Below are positions 2,055-47,777 of a stretch of 64,000 bases of DNA, in pieces. Position 1 is the stretch's first letter; each line of letters begins with the position of its first letter. A model generated the notes under the pieces. That model ran no database searches, was not told where the DNA came from, and saw only the letters and a list, made by a program, of their open reading frames with translations. This DNA is from Prasinococcaceae sp. CCMP 1430. Lineage: Eukaryota > Plantae > Prasinodermophyta. Location: contig RQSC01000023.1 of NCBI GenBank assembly GCA_013416795.1, positions 193,458-257,457 on the forward strand, written 5' to 3'. The position numbers and the translations under genes were made by a program.

Positions 2055-5000
2055 ATGGGGGGCGTCAAACGCAACGCTGAGGACGCGGGTGTGAGCAGCC
2101 CTCGCCGCGGCAGCGATGCGTCCCCTCGCGGCCGCCCGCGACGCGGCGAGAGTGCGATCGACAGGGATACTGTCAAGGCGCGCGAGGAGGCGAAGAAGGG
2201 GGGCACGCCCGCCAAGGGCGACATTGTGTGGGCCAAGACCAAGGGTTTCAAGCCCTGGCCGGTGCGTGGAGCGCACGGCTGCCGCTACGTGCGCGGCGTG
2301 GTGTGGTGCTGGGCATGCTTCCGCGGCGCTTTGGGGGTGCGCTGCGCCAGCAGGGGTGTGTGACCTAGCCGCGATGCACCCAGCGCTGACGCGCGCTTGC
2401 CGCGCGCTCGGCCCCTTGCCGTCTCGCCGTCGCGCGTCGCGCTCGCGCGCGGACCGCAGGCTCGGCTGCTAGATCCTAAGGAGCACGCCAAGGTCTCGGT
2501 GCCTGCTAACAAAAAGCTCGTCCTGTACTTTGGCTCGAGGCAGTACGGGATATGCCGCCCGGAGGACGTGGTGCCCTGGGCAGAGCTCGCGTCCAAGGCG
2601 GAACAGAAGGGAAAGGAACGTGCCCTCGTCGCGGCGATCAAGGAGGCCCAGAAGAAGCTTTTGAAACAAAACGGCGCCGGGAGCGACAAAGGCGACGGCT
2701 CGGACGCTCCTGCCAAGCCGGCGAAGCCAGTGGAAGCGCGCGCGTCCCGGCGCGACCGTGCCAAGGAGCGCGATGCGAACGGCGCCAAGCGTGCCGAGCC
2801 GGCAGTGTCGGACAGTGAGGTGGGCGGTACCGAGCGCGAGCGCAAGTCGGCCCGCGAGCGCGCGGAGGAAGCGCAGCTCCTGGCAGCTCTCGCCATGAGT
2901 CGTAGGGACACCGACAGTGCCAAGGGAGCGAGCGAGCCCGCGGACGGATCGGCGCCCGCGCGTCGCGCAGATGACGCCGGCGCAGCGGCTGCAGCAATCG
3001 AGCAGCCAAAGACGGCGCGCGAGGAGAGGCGCGCGGCGAAGGCAGAGAAGCTAACAGAGAAGCCGATGGAGAGGGCGGTGGAGAAGCTGCATAAAGCGGA
3101 GCAGAAGCCGCAGCCGGAGAAGCCAGGGGCGAAGCATGCGGGCAGCAGCGCTGCTGCTGAGGAAACAAACAACGGCGCCGTTGCCAAGGAGGGAAAGAAC
3201 GAGGAGGAGCCCGAGAGTGGAACCGCAGGCAACGCCGAAGAGACGCCCAGCAAGAGGAGGCGCGGCGCATCAAACCTCAATCGCGAGCTGGCCTCAATCA
3301 AGAGCGCTGAGGCGCTGGCTGAGAAGACGGACGAGGGCAAGGACGTGGGGCGCCGCGTGGGCATCTGGTGGGTCGATGACGGCTGCTTCTACATGGGGCG
3401 CGTGCTGGAGCAGAAGCGCGGCCGCTCGCTTGTACTTTATGAGGACGACAATGTTGAGGAATGGCTTCACCTCGACCGTGAGGTCACCAAGTGGGAGGAT
3501 GGGCAACCCGGGCCAGGGAAGCCCCTCGAGTTGAAGCCCAAGAAGGCCCATCCGACCGGATCGCCCAAGGTAACCGCGCGCCGCGACCGCTCTTCCAAGG
3601 GTGACAAGTCCACTCTCGGCGGCAAGGTAGATGCGGGCAAGAAGAGGCCGACCTCGCGGCGACCACGCGATGCCGCGACCGCCGCTGCCATAGAGGCTGC
3701 AGAAAAGGCCGAGGCGGCGTACGCGGCCTCGTCTCCGGAGGTCGGCAAGCCGGGCTGCCGCTGCTTGGCTGCGCTTGATGCGGTCGTTGCCACGCCTGTT
3801 TCGGCCAGCCTGATGGAGGCTCCTGGGGCCGGCGTGGACGGCCCCGGCGGCCTGAGCCAGGTGCGCGCAAAGCTCGCTGCGGGCGCATACTCGGACGAGG
3901 AGGTCTTCCATGCCGACATGCTCCAGGTGGTTGGTGCAGCAATTGAGGACGCGGCGGCCGCTGCCGAGCAGGCCGCCCTCACCGCCGAGACTGCCAGGGA
4001 GGCTGCGAAGGACGCGGCTAACGCGGCTGGAGCTGCATCCGACGCCGCGGATGACGCTGCCAATTCGAAGATTGCCAAGCTCGCGGCGGAGGCGGTGGCT
4101 ACCAAGGTTGCGGCTGAGCACGCCAGGATAAGACAGGAGGAGGTGCAGGCCCTGCGCGCCACGTACGAGGCCGTGTGGGACACAGCGGGAAAGGAGAGGG
4201 ACGCGAAGTGGCAGGCAGCGAAGAATGCGCGCGCGGCTGCGGACGCTGCCGAAGCCGCCGCCGCCGCCGCCGCGGCAGCGATGGCCCCGGAGAAGAAGCG
4301 CCAGCGGGGGGGCGCCGCGAGGAAGGACGACAAGGAAGCTGACGCCATCGCTGCGCTGCTTGGTGCGGCCGGTCAGGTCACTGGAGAGGCCAACGCCAAG
4401 CACAACAGTCGGCGCAAGCAGCGCAAGCCAAAGCCCGCCGCCGACCGCGGCCCGGCGCCACCAGTTGGCGGTGTGCATGGCGATTGGGGCCACGACCCTG
4501 GCAGCGCTGCGATGAAGCAAGGCCTGAAGGGCCTGCTTTTCGAGCGACTCAAGCAGGAAAACGCGGTGGGTGACGGCCAGGACGCAGAGGAGGGCCCCCA
4601 GGAGCCGGAAGCGTCACCTGAGGAGCAAGAGGCGCCTGTGCAGCCCGCACAGGCACCGCGCGCGCAAGTCCAGCAGGAGACGGCACCGCACGTCCAGAGC
4701 GCGGACCAGCAGCAGCAGGCCGCCGCCGCGGGTGCTCCGCTCATGGCGTTCCTGCAACCCACACTGGCCAGCCTCGCGGGGGCGGCCGCTGGCGCGAGCG
4801 CGCAGTCGCTCATGCAGCTGCAGCAGGCGTTGTTGCAGCAGCAGGCGATGCTGCAGCAAACAGTGCTGGCCGTGCAGGCGCTCTGGCACGAGGTCCCTGA
4901 TCCCTCGACCGGCCAGTCAGTCTGGGTGAACGTGGTCACCCGCGAGACATTGCCGCAGTCTCCGTTGCTGCAGCTGATTGCGCTGTTGCACGGTCTGCAC

Positions 5001-6006: not shown

Positions 6007-6667
6007 CTACAGGTCATACGAGATGGACCAAGTGTCCCTGAAGTTGGTGTTCAGGGTCCAGTTGTTCTCGCGGATCTGGCCGTACGGCTGCTTGTTGGCG
6101 AGATCGTACCCGAGCTGTAGGCGCAGGTCCTGGTCCTCGGTAAAGTTGAAGATCTTCTGCGAGAGCTCGAGCTTGGACTTCCACATGTGCGCCTTGCGAC
6201 CCGGGGCGTAGGCATAGGCGGCCTGCGGTGCGCGCGCGGCGACGCCGGCGGTGGTCGTGCATGCGCTCGTCAGGTACGTTGCGTTGACCACCACCCCGCC
6301 CATCCGTCACCTCCCACGCGCGCCGCGAGCAGCGGGGGCGCGCGCGCCGCGTCTGCTGAGCGCTCGCGCGGCGCACCTTGAGGTCCACGCTCAGGAGTCC
6401 ATCCGAGCTCAGCTCGAACGTCTTGCGCGCGGACGCGCCGTACGAGAGTTGCTCGATGTCGCTCTCGTACTTGGCGCCCATGTCGACGCGCGTGTTGATC
6501 TCAGGGAAGAACTTGCGGCGCAGCTTGGCCTTCCCCGAGAAGCGGCCGTCGTCGGTGGCGATCTTCCCCGACACCGTCAGCACCACGTTGTCGTCGGACA
6601 CGAAGTTCTCCTTGGCGTGCAGGAAGAGCTTGCGCTGGGCGCTGTCGAAGCGCAGCGAGGTTTCCAT
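6007..6667 (-). CDS. OEP21: Chloroplast outer envelope pore protein 21 (2 exons)
   Basis: METSLRF...HAKE N-terminus and EDQDLRLQLGYD..KQPYGQIRENNWTLN...WSISYDL C-terminus match OEP21; intron 6223-6376. Confidence 0.9.
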
Positions 6668-7954
6668 GGCGGCCGGACCCGTCCCCCCCCCGAGCTTGTG
6701 GCTCCCGCTCCCCGCACCAAGCAGCCAGTACTTCACGCCGCGCGCGCCGTGCGCGCCGTGCGCGCCTGTGGCGCCGATCCTCCCGCCCTCGCAACCCGGC
6801 CCAACCAATCGCCCCATCCCGCGCCCCTCCCGCGTGCACCCCCCTCCTCCTACACCCCTCCCCCCCACGCCTTCCCCCAGTCGGGTGGAGAGGGGGGGCG
6901 GGGCGCCTCGGCACCCCGCCTGCGAGGGCGCGCCCGCGCCCCGCCTGGCTGCTCGCCGGAGATACCCGACGCCGGATTGTAGATAACGGCTCGACGCCGC
7001 CGGACGGCCAACATGCGCGGCCAACATGCGCATGCCAGCCAGGCTGCCAGCCAGCCAGCCCCCGCCGCCTCTGCTGCCGCCGGCCGCCGGGTGATTGGGA
7101 GGGGTCTGGGCCTGCGCCGGATGCGGCGTACCGTCGCGACGGGCGGGGCGCAGGCAGGTGTTTCCCCCGGGTACGGACGGTGTGGTGGGTGCTGGCTGGC
7201 TGGCTGGCTCGTCCGCCCTCGCGCGCGCCCGCGGCGACCGCCGACCGACGACGACCGACGACCCGCCGGAGCTGGATCCGGAGCTGGGCTCGGGACGGCG
7301 CTGCGCCGCGGGGGGGAGCGCGAATTTCCAGCGGTGCGAACTTTGTTCGTTCGGTCGTTTGGTTGGTTGGTTGTGTGTGTGGTGGGTTGGTTGTTTTTCG
7401 CATCCCGTTGTTTCCGGTTTCCGGTTCCGTTTCGATTTCCCTGTCGGATAGGCGATTTGGTTGGTTGGTTGGCGGGGCGGCGCGGGCGCGGCGGATTTCG
7501 CGGCGCGCCCGCCGCGTTTTCTGACGGAAGGCGAGCGGCGCGCGGCGCGCGCGTTGCGTTGCGTGTCGCGCGCGNCCGTCTGCGACACTGGCCGCGCGCC
7601 CTCGGCCGCATCGCACCACAGCAGCAGGAGCTTGACGCCAGAGGGCACAGCGGCGGCTTGGGGTCCAGCCCCTGCCGCCCCCCCGGCCGCCGCCCCCGCC
7701 GCCGCCGCCGCCAGCCGCAGCAGGCAGGAGGGGGCGGCGTGCGCACGGCAGGGGGGGAAAGGCGCGGCGAGCGCGCTCCGGCGGGGAAAGGAGGCGCGTG
7801 AGACCTCCCTGGTGCTCCCCGCAGTGAGCCACCTCGCGGCGGCCGCCGGCGGGCGAGCGGCCAGTCCCAGCGCAACCGCTGCGACGGGCGGTGCGCGCGG
7901 CCGCGCGGTCCTGCCGGTGCGTCGAGCGGCGCCGCGGGGGCAGCGGAGGTGGCG

Positions 7955-33866: not shown

Positions 33867-34428
33867 GGGACGGCACACGAACGCACGCGCGCGCGCGCGC
33901 ACGCGCACACGCAGTTTGTGTGTGCGTGTGTGTGTTTGAGGCCTCCCACTACGGGGCAGCCACGCTGCGGTGCTCTCGCTCGGGCCGCGTGTACGCTCCC
34001 TCCTCCCCCCCACCCACCCACCCACCCACGCCCGCATGTACATAGCCGCAGCGCGCGGATGGGGGGGGGATGGCGCTCGATTCTCGCCCCGCCCGCCTGC
34101 CGCCTGCTGCGCGCGCCATTCGCTCCCCGCTCCGCTGCCGCCTCCCACGCGCGCGCGCGCGCGCGCGCCGAGGGAGGGGGCGCCCGCGGTGCCGGGCCCA
34201 CGGTGTAAAAATAGGCGCATGCTTGCTTGCACACACCCGCTGCGCGTGCTCGATACGCGCCTATCTGCGTCTGTGTCGGTAGACAGATGGTGTTCTCATA
34301 CGCAAAAGTGTGGTAGGAGTCGGGAGGGGGTGCTGCTGGTTGCGGGAGGGGTGAGCACACGCACGCACACACACGCACGTGCGTCCGCGCACGCGCTGAG
34401 CCTCGTCGGAAGTGGGGCGCCTCGACCC

Positions 34429-35868
34429 TCACTTTCTCCCCCAGCCAGCCGCGGAGAGCGTCGCTTTCGCCGCCCGCTTGGGCGCCACGCCGGTCGCCTT
34501 GAGCATGTCGCCGGCCTCGCGGTGGAGCTTGAAGCGCTTGCCGCTGTACTTGTCGCCGGGGGCCTGCGCGGCCGCGCGCGCGGGCGGCCGCGCGCGAGCC
34601 ACGCGTCAGTCGGGCCGGCGCGAGCGCGGCCGCGTCGCGAACGGCGATGCCCTCTCTCGCGCGCGTGCGTGCGAGACACGTGCGGCGTGCATGCATGGGG
34701 TCGCGTGTGTGCTCGTTCGTGTGTTGTGCCTCCGGGTGCACTGTGTGCGCGTGCGTGTGTTGGCGAGTGTGGGCGCGCCTCACCTGTTCGAGGAAGGCGT
34801 CGAGGTGCGCCGCGGCGGCCGCCTTGTCGCCCATGCCGATGAGCACGCGCCCCAGCTCCATGCGCGGCAGCGGGATGTGCGGGTGCATCTCGAGCTGCTT
34901 TTTGTGGGCCGCGGCGGCCTCCTCGTACGAGTAGTGCGGCATCTTCCCGAAGACGGTTCGCACGACGAACTTGTGCACGCTCGGCAGGCTGGCGAGGCCG
35001 TGGTGCCACTTGCCGAGCACCATCAGGCAGGTGTACGTCGTGAAGAACTCGTCGCCGACCGGCGGGTCGCCGAACTTCTCGCGGCAGAGCTCCAGGCAGG
35101 TGTCGCAGTGCTCGCGGATGCGCCGTGCGAGCTTGACGCGCGCCTGAATGCCCGTGCCGGGGATCTCCTGCACACGCCCGGCGCCGATCGCCACTGCAAT
35201 CAACATGGCGCGCGCGCGCGTGTGCGCGTGATTGTGAGCGATCGCGCGCGCGCGCTTGCGCGCAAGTGTCTGCTGCGCGCGGCAAGACCCCACATGCACG
35301 CGCACGCGCACACGAACATGCACACACGCGCGCAAACACACGCATTGTTGCGCGCGCGCTGGCATTGCATCGCGTGCGCACCTGCCAGGTGTGCCTCGGG
35401 CGAGCGCGGCGCGGCGTCGGTGGCGCGCTCGGCGAGCGCGAGCGCCTCCTTCGCGGCATCTGCGTCGCCGCGCTCGTCGGCGAGGTCCGCCGCCAGTCTC
35501 GCGCGCACCCACAGCCAGTCGCCGTCGGCATCGACGCGCTCGCCGGCGTCGCGCGCGGCGGCGACGGCGCGCACGGCGGCGTCGAACGAGCCCTCCGTGC
35601 GGAGCTCGTGCGTGCGCATCCACGGCCGCGGGTCGCTCTCAACACGGCCCTCAACAGCCTCCGCCGCGCCCTCAGCAGCAGCCTTGGCCTCTGCAGCGGG
35701 TGCAGGCGCGCGTGTCGAGGAGGTGCCGCCGCCGCTGCTGTTGAGCGACAGCGAGCGCAGCGAGGACGCCGCGTCGTAGTACACGCTGCCGCTGCCGGAG
35801 GTGACCGTCGCCGCCGCGCCGACACCGGCCACCGCCGCCGGCGGCGGGTCCCCCTCGCCGCCGCCCAT
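34429..35868 (-). CDS. Regulator of microtubule dynamics (RMDN/FAM82)-like TPR protein (3 exons)
   Basis: WLWVRAR, ALALAERA..APRSPEAHL, RIREHCD..LEL, LGKWHHGLASL...FGKMP..SYEEA pattern; introns approx. 35194-35381 and 34564-34783; N-terminal FFAT-like VYYDAAS. Confidence 0.72.
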
Positions 35869-36023
35869 GATGGCGGCGCTCGCGCCGCGCTGGGGCGGAG
35901 GTGGTGGTGGGTCTGGGACCCCTTTCTGGCGCGGCGCCCGCGCTCGCGCTGGCACTGCGCCCGCGAGCGCGCGCGCGCGAAAACAAGCAGCGGCGGCGCG
36001 AGCGCGCGCATAATGTGTGTGCG

Positions 36024-36505: not shown

Positions 36506-37268
36506 TCTACGGCACCACCACGCACCCTGTGCAGTTGAGGCTGCTTTTTGGTGACTTGGTCTATGGTTGATGACTCTTTGAGAATCCCCATGACGCCACG
36601 CCGCAGGCTGGGAGCGAAGGGCAGCCGCATGTGTGCCATCGACTGTCGATGCGACCCGAGGGTTCGCACAGCGTTTGCCGCCGCAAACACGAGCAACATA
36701 GTGTGGCGCACACCCGAGAGGGGCGGCGCGGGAGGCTCCCTCTCAACCGTGGGACAGAGTGCGAATACGGAGGTCCCAGGTCGCTCTTCTCGTTGACAGC
36801 GCGCGTGTGGGGGTCCGTGCGTGCGTGCGTGCATGCGTGCGTGCGCGTGCGAGTGAGCGAGCTGGCATGCGCCCGCAAGAGCGTGCCGGCCACCGTCTCC
36901 TCGTGCGGGCAGCACCCGTCCGGTGCCGCAGCAGCACGCGTGCCTACCAATGTTTCCCGCACCACGCTTCCTCGGTCATTTCTCTGTTCATCTGCCTCTG
37001 GACAATCGGCCTTCGTCACGTGCCCTGGCCGGAGCCCCTGCTCGAAACGGGTGCAAGAGGCGTATGGTGAACTCTCGGATATAAAATCACGTCAAACATG
37101 GGCACGGTTGCCTACATGCCACAGTCGCTACGTTGGTCCGTGGCGCGAGCAGGGCGCAGTGGAGCACTCGACCACAGCGCTCACGCCGCGGCGCCACACG
37201 GGGCGCCCGCCCGCCCGCCCGCCCGCCTGCCCGCCCGCTCGCCCCTCGCCTGCCCCATGCCCAAGGCN

Positions 37269-40200
37269 GGGCTCGCGCGCGCGGCCGAGTCGGTGCACGC
37301 GGCTGTCTTCACGGCGGGCATCGACCGCGGGCCGGTGGCCTACATGGGCCGTGCCGCCATGGACCGGGGCAACAAGATGCCCGTGGTCGGCGTGGTGCCC
37401 ATGTCACGCGCCACGTGGCCGGGCGACCCGAGGCCAAACCACGGGGCAAAAGGCCGCGAGCTGCGCCTCGGCGTGCACCCAGGCCACTCGCACGTGGTTA
37501 TGGCCGCCACGGACGACGAGGTGGGGGCACGGCAGCTGCGTTTTCGCGTGATTGAGGCCGTGCTCGCCCGCAACGCGCGTGGCGCGGGTCCACTGCCTGT
37601 GGTGGGTGTGCTTGTGAGCGGTGCCGAGGCCGCCATCGAGGAGACTCTTGCGTGCGTGAGGCGTGGGTGGCCGCTGGTGATCGTGAAGGGAACGGGTGGC
37701 GCAGCGGACGCCATTGCTTGGGCCTCGCAGAAGGAGAACGCCAACCACTTCGTGCCCAATCCCAAGGTGAGAGCAACGAACGCACCCGCGCGCAATTTGC
37801 GCGCGATCCTGCACGCGTGCACGCGAGCGCGCAGCGCTCGCTCGCTCGTGCGCCGTGCTCGCCCGATCCAGCCCACTGACAGCCGTCGCCGAACCCCCGC
37901 CCTCAAAAATGCCCTCCCATCTCATTCTCCGTGCGCCCGCACTCGCACCTGCAACCCGCGCGTGCATGCCTCCGTCAGCTCATGGAGATCGTTCGATCGG
38001 CAGTGATTGAAGTGATCAGCATAGCCGACGCCGACGGCAAGATTTTACAGGCGATGCTGGAGCGGTTATTCAAGACCATGCTGGCCAGGGGGGCGGGACC
38101 GGGGAAGGAAGACAAGGACGAGAAGTTGGGGGGTGACCAAAAGAGAGCAAAGGGCGTGAGAGCGGCGCTCATGGGCGACGGCGATGGCGATGATGGGCGC
38201 GTGCGGCTCCCACCCGTAGAGGACGCCACCGGCGCGTCCGTGATGGTCCATCAGGCCATCGCTATCTTCGAGAGCAACTCAGCGAGACTCGGAAAGATCT
38301 ATTGGTACATGTACGCGTCTATCCAGCTCCTCGCCGTGTTTATCGTGGTGCTTGTATCGGTGCGCAACGACTCGGTGTACGCGCGCGTGTCCGCACATGA
38401 CGCCGACACCATGGACCACATAATCTTCTTCACCCCCATCGCCAACACAATTCTGGTGTCCATCAACCAAAAGTTCCAGTATGGGCTGAAGGCAAAAATC
38501 CTCACGGCGGCAGCCCAGGCCATGCGCAAGGAACTTTACACCTATCGCTCGCGCGTCGAGGCCTTCGTGGCAGCGCAGAAATGCGATGCCATCCTGGCGG
38601 AGCGTTATCAGATTATCACCGATCGTCTGCAAAGCACGCTCGTCGGCGAGGTTGCTCTCGACCGCTCGGTCCTCACGGCATTGCGCAACACAGACTACCG
38701 CGTGAGCGAGGATGATGACGGCTTCAGCGTGCTGGCACCGGACTCGTACATCAAGATGCGCGCGGAGCCCGCCATGCTCACGTACCAGACGAGCGCGAAC
38801 ATGATGGACAGTGCAAGCAAGGCCATGTCCATTCTAGTGATCCTCATGTCAGCGTCGGGTACGGCGTTCGCGATCTTCGGCCTGAATATCTACATTGCCG
38901 TCACGACGGCAGTGTCGAGCGCGCTGCTCACGCTCACCGAGTCTCTTGGTTACGAGCCCAAGATCATTGCCGCTAACCGCGCCAGCGGAAAGATGCTCGA
39001 GGTGATTGGCTGGTGGCGCTCGCGCACGGCCATCGAGCAGGCCAACCCGCAGAAGTTCTCTAAGCTCGTGCGCGTGTGCGAACGCGCGATGTCCAACCAG
39101 CGGCGCTCAACGAACCCAGGCGCGCCCATGGTCGAGACGGAGGGCACGAATGGTGAGCTGAACTTCAACTTGGACGAGTTCATGGCAGATGTGAGCTCGA
39201 ACACGTCCGAGGGTAGTGTCGCCTGGGGCAAGGTGTGGATGGGCAAATATCCCGAGTTCTTTGAGATCTACATCGCCTGGTTGTGCAACACGCACAACAT
39301 GAAGCTCTACGATGGAGACGGCGACCCCATGGTGGCGTCCACGGTCACCGGGGTGGCATCCTCGATGGTCATGTCCAAGAAGATGGCGTCCTCGATGCGC
39401 GGCGCGCCGAACGTTGGTGGCTTTGCGACCTCCCCCGCGCCGTCGCCGCCACTCATGGCCTCGCTTCCGCCATCGCCGCCATTCTACGACTCGGGCGATG
39501 AAGCGGACATGGGGTCAAATGCGTGCGCATCGCACGCTCACGCGCGCGCGCTCGCGCTGATGCCGCAGCCCGCTACGCCTCCCTCGCTCGCGTCCTTCGC
39601 GAGTCCTCCGCCCTCGGCGCCGCCATCGGACATCGACCCCTCCGAGAATGCGGAATACGTGGCCATCACGGACTACGGGACCATGGTCCCGCCGCTGCCC
39701 GTCGACACGTTTTTTGCAGATGTGCCGTCTTACGTGGGCGAGACGGAGAAAGTGGAGAGAATCGTATGGGACCCCACCCTCTTCGGCGCGCGTGCCAGCT
39801 TCGTCGTGGAACCCGACCCGGGCACGCATCCCGATGAGGTGGAGAGAATGCTGAAACTGTCATCCTACATCTCGGAGCACCAGCACACGAATGCGGGCGT
39901 GCACGGCCTAATCAAGGTCATCGGGGCCTCGTCGGCGCTCGACGACTTCGTCGCTGGCGAGCTGCCAGGCCAGCGCCTGCCCGACGGGATCTCGCCGGAG
40001 GAAACCATCGCGCGGCCGCAGCTGGCGAGGGCGCCGGCCGCGCCGGCGAGACGCTCGCAAACTTGGACGCGCTCCTCGGCAGCAGGGACGCTGCAGTGGC
40101 CGCCGAGGCGGCGGGCGCGCCTGACGATGACCAGGAATCCCAAGGCGCCGCGGCAGCAGTGCGGGCGCCGTTGCGGCTGTCGGGGGGCGCGTACCCCGCG

Positions 40201-40300
40201 CTGGCGCTGCGGCTGCCGCAGCGGGCGACAGCGGCGCAGCGGGAGCGCGGCGAGGCGGGCGTCACGCTGGACCTGGTGCTCGATACCGCCTCGTCGGTAA
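37269..40300 (+). CDS. SLOG (LSDAT/TRPM-N-like) + two SLATT (DUF4231/SLATT_1-type) membrane effector; 5' end at single-n gap, 3' end uncertain
   Basis: GLARAA..AAVFTAGIDRGPVAYMG, VVGVVP, HPGHSHVV, VVGVLVSG, RRGWPLVIVKGTGGAADAIA (SLOG); phase-0 intron 37767-37978; two hydrophobic hairpins each followed by AAAQAMRKELYTYR and IGWWRS..EQA; DDDGFSVLAPDSYIKMR linker. Confidence 0.8.
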
Positions 40301-41241
40301 ACACGATCAACGCGCAGGTCGCGCAGGAGCTCACGCTAGAGACGGTCGGCGAGCAGCCGTCGGGAGTCAGCGCGGCCGGCGCACTGCCCTCCGCGCCCAT
40401 TTTTCTCCTCGGCGATGTGGAGCTTGGCGACTTGCCGAAGGAGGAGCGCGGCGGATTGTTCATGCGCGCGCTCGAGGCAGCCGCGCTGCCTATTGCGACG
40501 CCCGCGGCAGCGGGCGTGCTTGGCACGCCCTTCTTCGCGTGCTTCGAGGGCGTGGAGCTCGACTTTGGCTCAGCCCCCCTGGGCCCAGCTGGCGCCACCG
40601 CGACTACGAGCGCCACGCGCGCCGCACTCGTCGACGAGGCGGACGCGCCGCGGCCCGCGTCAGTGACTTTCTTCGCGCCAGACACGCAGCTGCCGGACGG
40701 TGTTGTGGCCGGCACGCGCCGAATCCCAATTGAGTCGCTGCCGGAGAGCGGCCTGCCCACCGTGCAGCTCATGGTCGAGGGCAGCAGTGCGACGGTTCCG
40801 GCGCTTCTTGACACAGGCTCGCCTGTGACCATCCTCAACAACCGCGCCGCAGAGGCGCTGGGCCTTGCCGTGAGCGGCGGTGACGCAGCCAGCGGCAATT
40901 TCCTCGCGCGCGCGGCCGCTAAGCTGCGCGCCGACCCTGCCGACACTCTCTTCATCGCCGGTGCGGACGGCAAGCCGGTGACCCTGCGGCGCACTGCGGA
41001 GGAGGCGACGCTCGCGCTGGCCACGGCCGCCTCTGAGGCGGGAGGTGGAGTCGCTGGCAGCGCCGCATCACTGGGCCGGACGAAGGTGTACGTGGGCGAG
41101 ATCCCGGGGTTGGCGGCCCTCGGCGGACTGGGTGCAAGCGCCGGGCCAGCGGCGATACTGGGCATGGATGCGCTGCGGCCACGCGGGAGGCTCATCTACC
41201 GCGCGCGCGCGAAAGAGCTGCTCATCCCGCAGGCGACGTAA
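40063..41241 (+). CDS. Two-lobed retropepsin-like aspartyl protease (5' end missing)
   Basis: LVLDTASS..IN..VA..L with GVLG, and ALLDTGSPVTILN..AAEALGL with ILGMD; no in-frame ATG upstream. Confidence 0.8.
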   Translation: MDALLGSRDAAVAAEAAGAPDDDQESQGAAAAVRAPLRLSGGAYPALALRLPQRATAAQRERGEAGVTLDLVLDTASSVNTINAQVAQELTLETVGEQPSGVSAAGALPSAPIFLLGDVELGDLPKEERGGLFMRALEAAALPIATPAAAGVLGTPFFACFEGVELDFGSAPLGPAGATATTSATRAALVDEADAPRPASVTFFAPDTQLPDGVVAGTRRIPIESLPESGLPTVQLMVEGSSATVPALLDTGSPVTILNNRAAEALGLAVSGGDAASGNFLARAAAKLRADPADTLFIAGADGKPVTLRRTAEEATLALATAASEAGGGVAGSAASLGRTKVYVGEIPGLAALGGLGASAGPAAILGMDALRPRGRLIYRARAKELLIPQAT

Positions 41242-41529
41242 AAAAAATCGAGGTCTCGACGGGCGTCACAGCGCGCGGGCCTGCGGGGGGCGCGCGCGCT
41301 GCGGCCCCATGGCCGCGCCGGCGCCCGCCTACCGCTTTTTTCGAATCGCCTTCGAAACGCACACGTCGAAACGCACGCCAAAAAAGAGGCGGCGGACCTC
41401 GCGCTGGCGGAGCACTGCGCGTCTGGCGGTGCGGACGCGGCGAGCCTGAGGGCGGCGCTCGATGCCGCAGGCGCACCTGGGGTCGAAGGAGCGCTCAATC
41501 GCGCGCTCGCCGCGCTTGGCGACGGCGGC

Positions 41530-45050: not shown

Positions 45051-47777
45051 CTACGAAAATGTCGGGTCCTCAAGCACGCCGCGGATCGCATCGACGTCCT
45101 CGTGGTCCGGGCCGAGCACCGTTTCGCGGATGACGAGCGCGCGCTCGAGCATTGGCCTGCCGACGTCATTGCGCGCGTGCTCCAAATGGATGATGGCGAG
45201 GTCGACCAGCGTCTGCGCGACGTCTATGTGGTCCTCGCCCTTGACCTTCTCCAGCGTCGCGAGCGCCGACTCGTACAGCTCCACAGCGGCCTCGCTGTCA
45301 CCTTCCTCATTGCGCGCCACAGCCAGGTCAAGCTGCACGGCGGCGACGTCCGGGTGGTCCGCGCCGAGCTCCGCGGTGCGAGCCTCCAGCTCTGCCACCA
45401 TTCCCGGGATGTCGGGCTCCTCAAAATCCTCCTCACCGAGCTCGTCCGCGGGCGGCAACTGCTCAACCGGTGGCGCGCGCTGCTCCTGCTTACCCTTTGA
45501 TCGCGCAGGCTTGGGACTCGGCGAGGGTTTCGAGGCCTTGGAGCGCGCGCCAGGCGTTGAGCCGCCGCCGCCACCCGGGAAAGCGCTAGGCCTGCTCACC
45601 GCGGGGCGCTTCGGCGCGGCTGCCGCGCCGCCCTTGGGCGCGGCGGCCGCACCGCCCTTGTGTGGTATGCGGTGCGAGACGTTGGCGGCCTCCGCGGCAG
45701 CAACAGCTGCGTCCACGTCAGCGCCACCGTCGATGGCGCCCATGCCCGCCTTCATTTGCTCGCCCAGGATGCGCGCAACGTCTTGCAGATGAGACTTGAG
45801 GTCACCACCGGCGCGGTACACCTCGAGCGCCGTCCGCATGCCCGCCGACCTCGCTTCCACCGCCGGTGAATTCAACGCCAAGACCAGGACCTTCATGACC
45901 GCCGACTCCTGCAGCCCCGAGCGTCCGACACCAAAGTCGTGCACGAGCTCGCCGAGGAGCAGGCAGCGACCTATCAGGTCCTTGGCGGCCTTCTTGTTCT
46001 TCACCGGCGCGAGGGCCGCGTGCGCAACGGCCTGCAGGCTGACCTCTTTCGAACGCGCAAGAAACAGGAGCGCGTCAAGTGCAGCGTCGCGAATGCGTGC
46101 ATTGGTGTTGGCACAGCGTTCAATCAGCGGCGCGATGAGGTCCGATGCGTGCGGTGCCACGTCTCGATGCCGCAGGCCCTGCGCGGGGCCGGTCGTGAGG
46201 ATGGCCTTCAACAGCGGCAGCGAGCGATAATACACCGATGCCACCTTGTCGGCCAGCGCCTTCCTCAGCACTGCCACGAGCCCCGCGAACGCCGAACCAT
46301 CCTCCAGCACGTACTCCTCGCTGTCGATGCCCGTGGAAACGCGCTGCAGCGCTGCCTCGCGCAGGCTCCAGTTCTTGCTGTACAGACACGCTGCCACGTA
46401 CTCGGAGACCCCCATCGATTCCACCAGCGGACGCGCATCCTTCCAGCCGGCACCTTCGAGCGCCTCTGGGGCGGGCAGCTCACCGAAGAACTCGGCATCC
46501 GCGCCCTCCGGCTTCGGCCCCCCCGCCTCGCTTTGCTTGGGCCGCCTGGTTTGGTGCGTGCGCGCCACCATCGCTGGCGACATGATGGTGTGAATGCCGC
46601 CGTGCATCGCTTCCTCCGAAACTTCGCTTGGGTCCGGATAGTGCGCAGTGCCGGGCCCGGCCTCCGCTTCGTCGTCCTTAGGCTGCGGCAGCGGGCAATC
46701 CTCGGGGTTGGCAGGCATCCCACCGCCCATTCCAGCGCCGATGTCCATCCCAATGTATGCATCCTCGACGCCGTACGGCTCCATGATTTCTGACTCCTCC
46801 GCCGTGATGTGACCCGCGTACTCGGGCTGCGCGGGCGTCGGCAGGGCCATCCTCTCCTTGTCACCCTTGGTGAGCGCGCGATTAAACACGTCCATCTCGC
46901 TCGGCCGGCCAGGCTGCGCGGCAGCGTTGTGCGGCATCGCGCCCCCCGTGAGCGCCTGCGGGAGGCCGACGGCGCGCAGCTGGTCGATCTCATATTTGAG
47001 CTGCTTCGCGAGGTCGAAGTCGTCGTTGTTCACCGCCGCCGTCTTGCGCATCTCGAGTTCGCCCATCCGCACACCGAGTGCGCGTACGCGCTCCATGATG
47101 ATCTTCACGCTCTTCGCGGCGTCGTAGTCCTCACGGCCAATCGCGTCGGCCTTCCGCGCCGCCAGCTCCCGGAACACGCGGCCCATCTCTTCGTCCATCA
47201 CGGCGAGACCTCCGCCGCCGGCCCCCGCCTGCGCGCCACCGCCTTCGCGCTGCATGTGTCGGGCGAACTTGTCGTTGGACTTCACCAGCCCGGCGGGCGA
47301 CAGCGGCCTGCCGTGCACGTTGACGGCGACGACGCCGATCTGGTTGTACACGTTGAGGTTGTTCGTGAGGGGTGCGTGCACCACCAGCTTGAGCGCCGCG
47401 GCCGTCGTGTTGAGGTACACGCTCTTGAGCTCCCGCGCCTCAAAGCGCGAGCGCTCGTTGCTGTCAAACGAGAAGTAGCCCAGCCTCTTCCACTCCAGCG
47501 TGCTCATGGAGAGGTCGCCAGGCGGCGCGCCAGGCGGTGGCATTCCAGCGTACAGCTCCACCCGGCGCGCAATCTTGAACTCGTGGGAGAGCACCTGCAC
47601 GCGCGAGACGGCCGATGCGCCCTCCAGCTGCAGCACCACCTCCTGCGGGAACGATGAGTAGCGCGGCGTCTGCCAGCCGCAGTGCGAGTGCCACGCCGCG
47701 TGGTGCTGCAGGTCGAGCGCCGGGTAGTCCGGGTCCTCGCCGCTGCACGACAGCACGCGAAACGCGAGGCGCGACAT
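45051..47777 (-). CDS. CEP104: Centrosomal/ciliary-tip protein CEP104 (FAP256)-like with C-terminal TPRs
   Basis: GWQTPRYSSFPQE, VQVLSHEFKIARRVE, RLGYFSFDSNERSRFEARELKSV, NNLNVYNQ; UVR-like EDYDAAK/DDFDLAK; TOG YSKNWSLRE; KLC-like TPRs LGADHPDVA, LGPDHEDV. Confidence 0.92.
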   Translation of the reverse strand: MSRLAFRVLSCSGEDPDYPALDLQHHAAWHSHCGWQTPRYSSFPQEVVLQLEGASAVSRVQVLSHEFKIARRVELYAGMPPPGAPPGDLSMSTLEWKRLGYFSFDSNERSRFEARELKSVYLNTTAAALKLVVHAPLTNNLNVYNQIGVVAVNVHGRPLSPAGLVKSNDKFARHMQREGGGAQAGAGGGGLAVMDEEMGRVFRELAARKADAIGREDYDAAKSVKIIMERVRALGVRMGELEMRKTAAVNNDDFDLAKQLKYEIDQLRAVGLPQALTGGAMPHNAAAQPGRPSEMDVFNRALTKGDKERMALPTPAQPEYAGHITAEESEIMEPYGVEDAYIGMDIGAGMGGGMPANPEDCPLPQPKDDEAEAGPGTAHYPDPSEVSEEAMHGGIHTIMSPAMVARTHQTRRPKQSEAGGPKPEGADAEFFGELPAPEALEGAGWKDARPLVESMGVSEYVAACLYSKNWSLREAALQRVSTGIDSEEYVLEDGSAFAGLVAVLRKALADKVASVYYRSLPLLKAILTTGPAQGLRHRDVAPHASDLIAPLIERCANTNARIRDAALDALLFLARSKEVSLQAVAHAALAPVKNKKAAKDLIGRCLLLGELVHDFGVGRSGLQESAVMKVLVLALNSPAVEARSAGMRTALEVYRAGGDLKSHLQDVARILGEQMKAGMGAIDGGADVDAAVAAAEAANVSHRIPHKGGAAAAPKGGAAAAPKRPAVSRPSAFPGGGGGSTPGARSKASKPSPSPKPARSKGKQEQRAPPVEQLPPADELGEEDFEEPDIPGMVAELEARTAELGADHPDVAAVQLDLAVARNEEGDSEAAVELYESALATLEKVKGEDHIDVAQTLVDLAIIHLEHARNDVGRPMLERALVIRETVLGPDHEDVDAIRGVLEDPTFS

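What the first reader, a model, noticed from the sequence alone, without database searches (positions are those of the whole stretch)
37269..39120. Bacterial-type SLOG-SLATT-SLATT nucleotide-sensing membrane effector domesticated in a green alga
Seen: a SLOG/LSDAT-type Rossmannoid domain (GLARAA, TAGIDRGPVAYMG, HPGHSH, GWPLVIVKGTGGAADAIA) spliced through a canonical phase-0 intron (37767-37978) to two 2-TM hairpins with SLATT-like tails (AAAQAMRKELYTYR; DDDGFSVLAPDSYIKMR; WWRS...EQA). Known: LSDAT+SLATT fusions are described in prokaryotes as predicted nucleotide-gated pore effectors linked to SMODS/CBASS-type conflict systems, and the LSDAT domain is related to the N-terminus of animal TRPM channels. 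Inference: a horizontally acquired or ancient antiviral/cell-death or ion-channel effector, now intron-bearing and flanked by algal genes. No cognate nucleotide cyclase is visible in this window.
Basis: partly seen in the sequence, partly recalled or inferred. Interest (0 to 1): 0.9.

Follow-up and report, generated by a model that had tools for sequence, protein, structure and literature searches.

The report
Misassembled piece of algal SLOG-SLATT gene
This is a real nuclear gene of a green alga for a large membrane protein made of two copies of a bacterial-type "nucleotide sensor plus membrane hairpins" module, which resembles the ligand-binding part of animal TRPM channels; the window holds only a misplaced middle piece of it, and its job in the alga is untested.

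Summary
The domains are real. Exon A (37269-37766) hits LSDAT_prok (2e-21). Exon B hits SLATT_1 (1e-8) and folds as two helical hairpins. The phase-0 intron junction is colinear with intron-free relatives; no RNA confirms it.

An independent contig matches 37269-40025, then runs on 1.6 kb upstream and 2.1 kb downstream in other sequence that includes another SLATT tail. So the N at 37268 and the join near 40010-40025 are most likely assembly faults, and the immediate flanking genes are not true neighbours. The piece spans about one 850-aa repeat of a tandem (LSDAT-SLATT-SLATT)x2 protein.

Relatives occur in Cymbomonas and Mantoniella (one clade, support 100). An ancyromonad carries a single-module version, and haptophyte-rich Atlas clusters look similar. 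So this is an old protist family, not a one-off capture; the donor is unresolved. Bacterial copies often precede TIR genes (11/64). The algal sensor keeps only one of three TRPM2 ADP-ribose contacts.

Best reading: a nucleotide-gated, 8-helix membrane channel or effector, ligand unknown. The scan found this family before on other pieces of this genome (s1-396452, s1-539142). New variant of a known kind.

The parts
37268..37268 (.). Single N: assembly gap. The true upstream part of the gene (at least 1571 nt, holding the first strands of LSDAT-1) is missing from the window
   Evidence: table 8 (X1 contig 3, 6441 nt, aligned record 2114-4870); (match starts at profile position 29)
37269..37766 (+). 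Exon A: C-terminal three quarters of LSDAT/SLOG domain of module 1
37767..37978 (+). 212-nt GT..AG phase-0 intron; supported by homology, not by RNA; position not shared with Cymbomonas, L001 or L012
37979..38089 (+). Start of exon B: last strand and helix of LSDAT-1
38231..38551 (+). First SLATT-type (DUF4231-like) helical hairpin, TM1-TM2, ending in the ELYTYR helix; TM2 is less hydrophobic than in relatives (1.3 vs 2.3)
38705..39103 (+). DDGF linker motif and second hairpin SLATT_1, TM3-TM4, with WW...EQANP tail
39170..39295 (+). Algal-clade-specific helical cap of about 45 aa; phmmer matches to the presumed bacterial rows end before it
   Evidence: no Pfam or Atlas hit
39341..39661 (+). 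Low-complexity Pro/Ser linker between modules
   Evidence: not matched in relatives
39662..40024 (+). N-terminal extension and first strand of LSDAT of module 2, cut just before the F-S-R-G motif
   Evidence: P0161 731-853, E 8.7e-13
40010..40025 (.). Probable false join: a 16-nt overlap between the SLOG-SLATT contig and the aspartyl-protease contig
   Evidence: contig 3 leaves at 40025; contig 4 enters at 40010 with 178 other letters before it; protease frame has no ATG back to the stop at 39835; relative L098 has an N-terminal extension and no SLOG upstream

Best explanation
The window holds about one repeat period (848 codons) of a nuclear gene for a tandem membrane protein: [LSDAT - SLATT hairpin - SLATT hairpin - helical cap] x2, about 8 membrane helices in one chain (relatives 1400-1620 aa). 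SHOWN: the domains; the MHR1/2 fold of the sensor in a close relative; two helical hairpins; one algal clade; tandem form in relatives; TIR neighbours of the bacterial single-module form. INFERRED: the cytosolic LSDAT clamshell binds an NAD-derived or other nucleotide signal and closes, as in TRPM2. This pulls on the SLATT hairpins, which assemble with other subunits into a pore that lets ions through, so that the cell depolarises, signals or dies under infection or stress. The duplication would fix two unlike modules in one chain, as a pseudo-heterodimer. The ligand is probably not plain ADP-ribose bound in the TRPM2 way, because two of three contact residues are replaced across the algal clade.
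For: Pfam and NCBIfam hits. 774 relatives, the best being the two-module Cymbomonas protein (E 1e-93). AlphaFold model of exon B, pLDDT 86.9, two long hairpins, matching bacterial DUF4231+SLATT_1(+LSDAT) models at TM 0.64. The module-1 model of relative P0161 (pLDDT 89.2) matches TRPM2 MHR1/2 at Z 25.6, rmsd 3.3 A, 271 residues. A TIR gene lies first downstream in 11/64 bacterial loci against 8/336 other positions (p 2e-5; related genomes inflate this). TIR plus SLATT effector with cADPR as signal is reported as type VII Thoeris (10.64898/2025.12.03.692087). The glycine loops, the H-S/T-H strand and new clade-wide residues (D in T-x-G-x-D-x-G, and T-W-P-G-D) are kept in nearly all algal copies, as expected of a working pocket.
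Against: No ligand, pore, toxicity or expression data. No RNA contig over the gene. No TIR gene in the window, and true neighbours are unknown. The TRPM2 contacts Y295 and R358 are replaced (E and G); only R302 is kept. About 70% of bacterial loci show no TIR within 5 kb. No solved SLATT_1 structure was matched. Long retention in ordinary gene neighbourhoods (L001, L005, L012) is more typical of housekeeping genes than of defence genes.
Confidence: 0.45

Rival explanations
1. It is a nucleotide- or metabolite-gated channel repurposed for everyday physiology (redox or NAD status, calcium or osmotic signalling), a functional analogue of TRPM2 with a SLATT pore, and not a defence or death protein.
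For: Kept in Cymbomonas, Mantoniella and this alga, with module 1 grouping across species (support 89-90). Sits among housekeeping genes in relatives. The altered pocket is conserved within the clade. No copy in the virus or phage collections.
Against: Four paralogous entries in Cymbomonas and long branches (about 1.0 for this copy) fit faster, conflict-type evolution. The bacterial context and the tested SLATT effectors are defensive.
Confidence: 0.3
2. The LSDAT domains no longer sense a nucleotide. They act as a scaffold or protein-interaction platform, and the hairpins anchor or shape a membrane.
For: Loss of the aromatic clamp and the phosphate-binding Arg, and of the bacterial D-G-G-T and W-G-x-E motifs. 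An LSDAT domain serves in the Tetrahymena ciliary tip structure (9nw3). Several TRPM members keep the fold without known ADP-ribose gating (own knowledge).
Against: The glycine-rich loops lining the pocket and R302 are kept in most algal copies. The sensor-to-hairpin spacing is the same as in bacteria.
Confidence: 0.15
3. This particular copy is silent or decaying, or is only a duplicate of the gene already reported on another piece of the assembly and pasted here by gap filling.
For: Both ends are assembly faults. The fragment equals one repeat period, as expected if a contig broke at a short repeat shared by the two modules (inference). No RNA cover. TM2 is weak.
Against: 848 codons without a stop and GC3 0.80-0.83, close to other genes. 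Conserved motifs are intact. Being the same gene as the other piece would make this report redundant, not the gene unreal.
Confidence: 0.08
4. Bacterial contamination.
For: Most homologues are bacterial, and the piece is misplaced in the assembly.
Against: Spliceosomal-type intron, host-like GC3, host-like contig depth, and placement inside an algal clade with support 100 in both domain trees.
Confidence: 0.02

Closest known systems
Bacterial LSDAT_prok + DUF4231 + SLATT_1 fusion (PF18171, PF14015, PF18181; predicted by Burroughs et al. 2015, doi 10.1093/nar/gkv1267, paper not held; cited through PMC13143021 and PMC7159879)
   Same: Same domain order and spacing, 23-33% identity, same predicted shape (TM 0.64).
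   Different: Two modules in one chain in the algal relatives; extra cap and N-terminal extension; altered pocket motifs; intron; no operon with TIR.
Cymbomonas CYMTET_7339 and CYMTET_49488, Mantoniella A0A7S0SIS2 and metagenomic P0161 (database entries, no paper found)
   Same: Same clade (support 100) and cap; tandem layout in the full-length members; 31-51% identity.
   Different: Intron positions differ in those checked. These are uncharacterised proteins with automatic names.
TRPM channel MHR1/2 domain (TRPM2 ADP-ribose site; PMC6759353)
   Same: Same fold (Z about 25) and profile match (E 4e-17 to 3e-31).
   Different: No MHR3/4, no 6-TM TRP pore, no NUDT9-H. Y295 and R358 not kept.
Type VII Thoeris (TIR makes cADPR; SLATT effector ThsH; 10.64898/2025.12.03.692087) and type I Thoeris SLOG sensor
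   Same: SLATT membrane effector logic, with TIR as neighbour in bacterial relatives.
   Different: ThsH is described as a SLATT effector with its own pocket, not an LSDAT fusion. No TIR partner is known for the algal gene. Homology to ThsH was not tested; PADLOC 2023 gave no hit.
Fabomonas tropica EP00163_P028291 (ancyromonad LSDAT-SLATT-SLATT, 1000 aa)
   Same: Eukaryotic, same module; sister to the algal clade in the SLATT tree (support 95).
   Different: Single module, no cap, keeps TRPM2-like W/R/R contacts; does not group with algae in the LSDAT tree.

Membership tests
LSDAT (SLOG in TRPM) domain | Pfam score above curated cut-off | tested here: met
   76.5 bits vs 25.4 (prok); 49.1 vs 25.7 (euk)
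LSDAT (SLOG in TRPM) domain | MHR1/2 Rossmannoid fold | tested here: met
   Relative P0161 model Z 25.6 to 8sr9; window exon A matches TRPM chains by sequence, E 5.5e-5. The window's own domain was not folded
SLATT_1 / DUF4231 2TM effector | Profile hit and two-helix hydrophobic hairpin with polar tail | tested here: met
   SLATT_1 35.6 bits vs 26.3; NF033634 41.3 vs 41; hairpins in model. First hairpin by alignment only
SLATT_1 / DUF4231 2TM effector | Oligomerises into a ligand-activated pore | not testable with these tools
   Only monomer models could be made
Bacterial LSDAT-DUF4231-SLATT_1 fusion family | Domain order LSDAT, hairpin, hairpin in one chain | tested here: met
Bacterial LSDAT-DUF4231-SLATT_1 fusion family | Pocket motifs D-G-G-T..G-V-M and W-G-x-E | tested here: not met
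   Algal copies read T-A/S-G-x-D-x-G and D-E/x
TRPM channels | MHR3/4 and 6-TM TRP pore domain | tested here: not met
   No such Pfam hit in exon B or in full-length P0161 and P0001
TRPM2-type ADP-ribose sensor | Y295, R302, R358 contacts (PMC6759353) | tested here: not met
   Only R302 kept, by profile alignment
Thoeris / CBASS-type defence system | Linked signal-making enzyme (TIR, SMODS/CD-NTase) | tested here: inconclusive
   No TIR in window; true flanks missing; rest of genome not searchable by sequence; SMODS not searched in the window
Thoeris / CBASS-type defence system | Antiviral activity or cell death | not testable with these tools
   Needs experiment

The most novel reading that the evidence does not exclude
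Green algae and other protists carry an old, undescribed class of nucleotide-gated ion channel in which the TRPM-type LSDAT sensor gates a bacterial SLATT pore. In early-branching green algae it became a two-module, 8-helix chain that answers an NAD-derived immune signal and kills or depolarises virus-infected cells. The single-module ancyromonad protein, which keeps the TRPM2 ADP-ribose contacts, would be a surviving link between bacterial TIR-SLOG-SLATT defence and TRPM channels.
Probability: 0.2. Interest if true: 0.85.

Novelty: new variant of a known kind. Interest (0 to 1): 0.5.

Why it matters
If the protein gates a pore with an NAD-derived signal, it would give marine green algae a candidate effector for virus-triggered death, where few are known. 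It would also give a small system for testing what the LSDAT/MHR1/2 domain sensed before it joined the TRP pore in TRPM channels. The practical point is also useful: the published-style gene order here is wrong, and gene models for both this gene and the neighbouring protease would be chimeric.

Tried and rejected
The joined (spliced) protein was not built or searched; exons were searched, aligned, folded and treed separately. The word-index homologue search with exon B gave nothing, whereas full phmmer found 774. Viral contigs and phages: no relative. PADLOC: no hit. Fold searches of the SLATT part found only generic helical bundles. Burroughs 2015 is not held, so I could not check whether it already mentions algal copies. 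I first suspected a haptophyte host; OEP21 rejects that. Variants in run X4 are mostly non-synonymous at depth 3-5 in both this gene and the protease, so I treated them as errors and drew nothing from them. A plastid (cyanobacterial) origin is not favoured by the best tree but is not rejected (AU p 0.37). The 'careful' trees did not finish; supports are SH-aLRT only. A true circular permutation (s1-543267) is rejected in favour of a one-period fragment.

Full report
Observation. Exon A (37269-37766) scores 76.5 bits to LSDAT_prok and 49.1 to LSDAT_euk; exon B scores 35.6 to SLATT_1 and has two NF033634 stretches. All pass the curated cut-offs. The intron is GT..AG, phase 0. Its removal gives the same contiguous motif as in two relatives that have no intron there. 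That is homology support only: neither RNA-like run covers the gene, although one covers the neighbouring protease exactly. The joined protein was not built; each exon was handled by reference.

The window holds a misplaced fragment. In run X1, a near-identical sample, one 6441-nt contig matches 37269-40025 with 2 differences. It continues 1571 nt upstream and 2113 nt downstream in sequence unlike the window. The downstream part has a 59-nt stretch 85% like the SLATT tail at 39008-39066, 1430 nt on. A second contig enters at 40010 with 178 other letters before it. The window has a single N at 37268. The protease frame has no ATG between the stop at 39835 and its homologous region, and a related genome shows the protease with its own N-terminus and no SLOG upstream. 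I infer that a contig of the SLOG-SLATT gene was pasted into a gap at the 5' end of the protease gene, whose start may be the ATG at 37257. X1 could be the source sample or a sister culture, so a true rearrangement in one line is not strictly excluded. The fragment begins just after the F-S-R-G motif of module 1 and ends just before that motif in module 2: 848 codons, about one period (relatives 700-765). 39662-40024 matches the start of the second LSDAT of P0161. This explains the apparent circular permutation.

Host. The window has a chloroplast OEP21 gene (E 2.6e-15 to 7bgh), so it is green lineage. Earlier notes name Prasinoderma coloniale; I did not test the species. GC at third codon positions is 0.80-0.83 in the gene and 0.82-0.94 in others, and contig depth is like the flanks. 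It is a resident nuclear gene.

Family. phmmer of exon B gave 774 hits. The best are Cymbomonas proteins, a cluster with a Mantoniella member already named as a SLATT protein in UniRef, and metagenomic proteins. Full-length ones carry two LSDAT+SLATT modules; P0004 is a one-module form of unknown lineage. Their loci lie among intron-broken housekeeping genes. These rows share a helical cap, and phmmer matches to the presumed bacterial rows end before it. They form one clade with support 100 in the SLATT tree and in the LSDAT tree. I assigned the 'algal' label by names, loci and the cap; some rows have no taxon. The window groups with module 1 of the others (support 89-94), so the duplication is probably older than these lineages. 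Outside this clade, Fabomonas tropica has a one-module fusion. It is sister to the algae in the SLATT tree (95) but not in the LSDAT tree, and long branches could cause the join. An Atlas feature search with the P0161 module returns clusters that are 50-80% eukaryotic, several haptophyte-rich (a lead, not an alignment). So the architecture is not confined to one alga. No bacterial donor is resolved; a cyanobacterial origin is neither favoured nor rejected.

Bacterial context. Eighty GTDB loci come mainly from Chloroflexota, Acidobacteriota, Beggiatoa-group gammaproteobacteria, Verrucomicrobia, cyanobacteria, Bacteroidota and myxobacteria. The one recurrent neighbour across phyla is a TIR-domain gene, often fused to WD40 or FGE-sulfatase domains: first downstream in 11/64 loci, second in 5/56, against 8/336 elsewhere. 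Most of these TIRs show a Glu at the expected helix. Related genomes inflate the p value. No SMODS/CD-NTase cluster stood out, though only recurrent clusters were annotated. TIR-made cADPR with a SLATT effector is reported for type VII Thoeris. SLATT was predicted as a nucleotide-responsive pore (PMC7159879; PMC9503650).

Structure and pocket. Exon B folds with pLDDT 86.9 into two long helical hairpins and a small cap. It has no PDB match beyond generic bundles and matches bacterial DUF4231+SLATT_1 models. The intact module of P0161 matches TRPM MHR1/2 at Z about 25. TRPM2 binds ADP-ribose with Y295, R302 and R358 (PMC6759353). Mapped through the profile alignment, the window keeps R302 and has E and G at the other two, like the rest of the algal clade. 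Bacteria mostly keep the aromatic (W, 51/65) and sometimes R358 (22/65), but not R302. Fabomonas keeps all three. The algal ligand is therefore open.

Mechanism and verdict. Most likely a nucleotide-gated membrane channel or effector with two unlike modules in one chain (0.45 for a stress or infection role, 0.30 for everyday signalling, 0.15 for a ligand-free scaffold). It works like a bacterial LSDAT-SLATT effector by anatomy, but fails that family's pocket motifs, and it is not a TRPM channel. In four literature searches on these domains I found no paper on algal LSDAT-SLATT proteins, though SLATT genes in a haptophyte and in algal viruses are mentioned and the founding paper was unavailable. 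The scan has already reported the tandem gene from another piece of this genome. Interest 0.5: a real and testable family, but a known module, no functional data, and a faulty assembly at this place.

Noticed in passing
P0082 (EukProt EP00163, Fabomonas tropica) and P0027 (L096, L097): Ancyromonad LSDAT-SLATT-SLATT protein whose sensor scores better to LSDAT_euk than LSDAT_prok and keeps the TRPM2 ADP-ribose contacts; the best candidate for an ADP-ribose-gated SLATT channel.
   Followed up: partly
window 40012-41241 (+), possibly with 37081-37267: Clan AA aspartyl protease gene (Asp_protease_2), covered by an RNA-like contig; its 5' end is cut by the misassembly. A TATA-like box at 37080 and the ATG at 37257 may be its real start.
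   Followed up: partly
window 41330-41388: X1 contig 4 has 115 other letters where the window has 57; another local assembly difference beside a repeat.
   Followed up: no
window 7575, 26081, 47899, 51054: Four more single-N positions; they may mark similar false joins, so gene fusions across them deserve suspicion.
   Followed up: no
window 6010-6760 (-): Chloroplast outer-envelope pore OEP21 homologue.
   Followed up: yes
P0030, P0116 and similar bacterial hits: Some bacterial DUF4231-SLATT_1 proteins end in a muramidase plus peptidoglycan-binding domain (P0030) or another unannotated enzyme-like domain (P0116).
   Followed up: partly
L034, L037, L079, L081, L083-L085, L091: In some Chloroflexota and cyanobacteria the LSDAT and the SLATT-SLATT parts are separate adjacent genes.
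   Followed up: no
L039 6677-8254, L043 7147-8115, L067 7064-9145; L088 3-3215: Other downstream neighbours look by eye like TIR/DRHyd-fold nucleotide enzymes; L088 fuses SLATT_1 to TPR-S and MAP3K_TRAF_bd domains.
   Followed up: partly
L005 11000-12950, L012 4700-4950: Introns in the metagenomic algal relatives resemble Mamiellales introner elements (from memory, not tested).
   Followed up: no
PDB 9nw3 chain 6A: An LSDAT domain is a component of the ciliary tip central pair, a non-channel use of the fold.
   Followed up: no
window 34400-35900 (-), 45069-45398 (-): Intron-bearing TPR-repeat genes upstream and downstream of the locus.
   Followed up: partly
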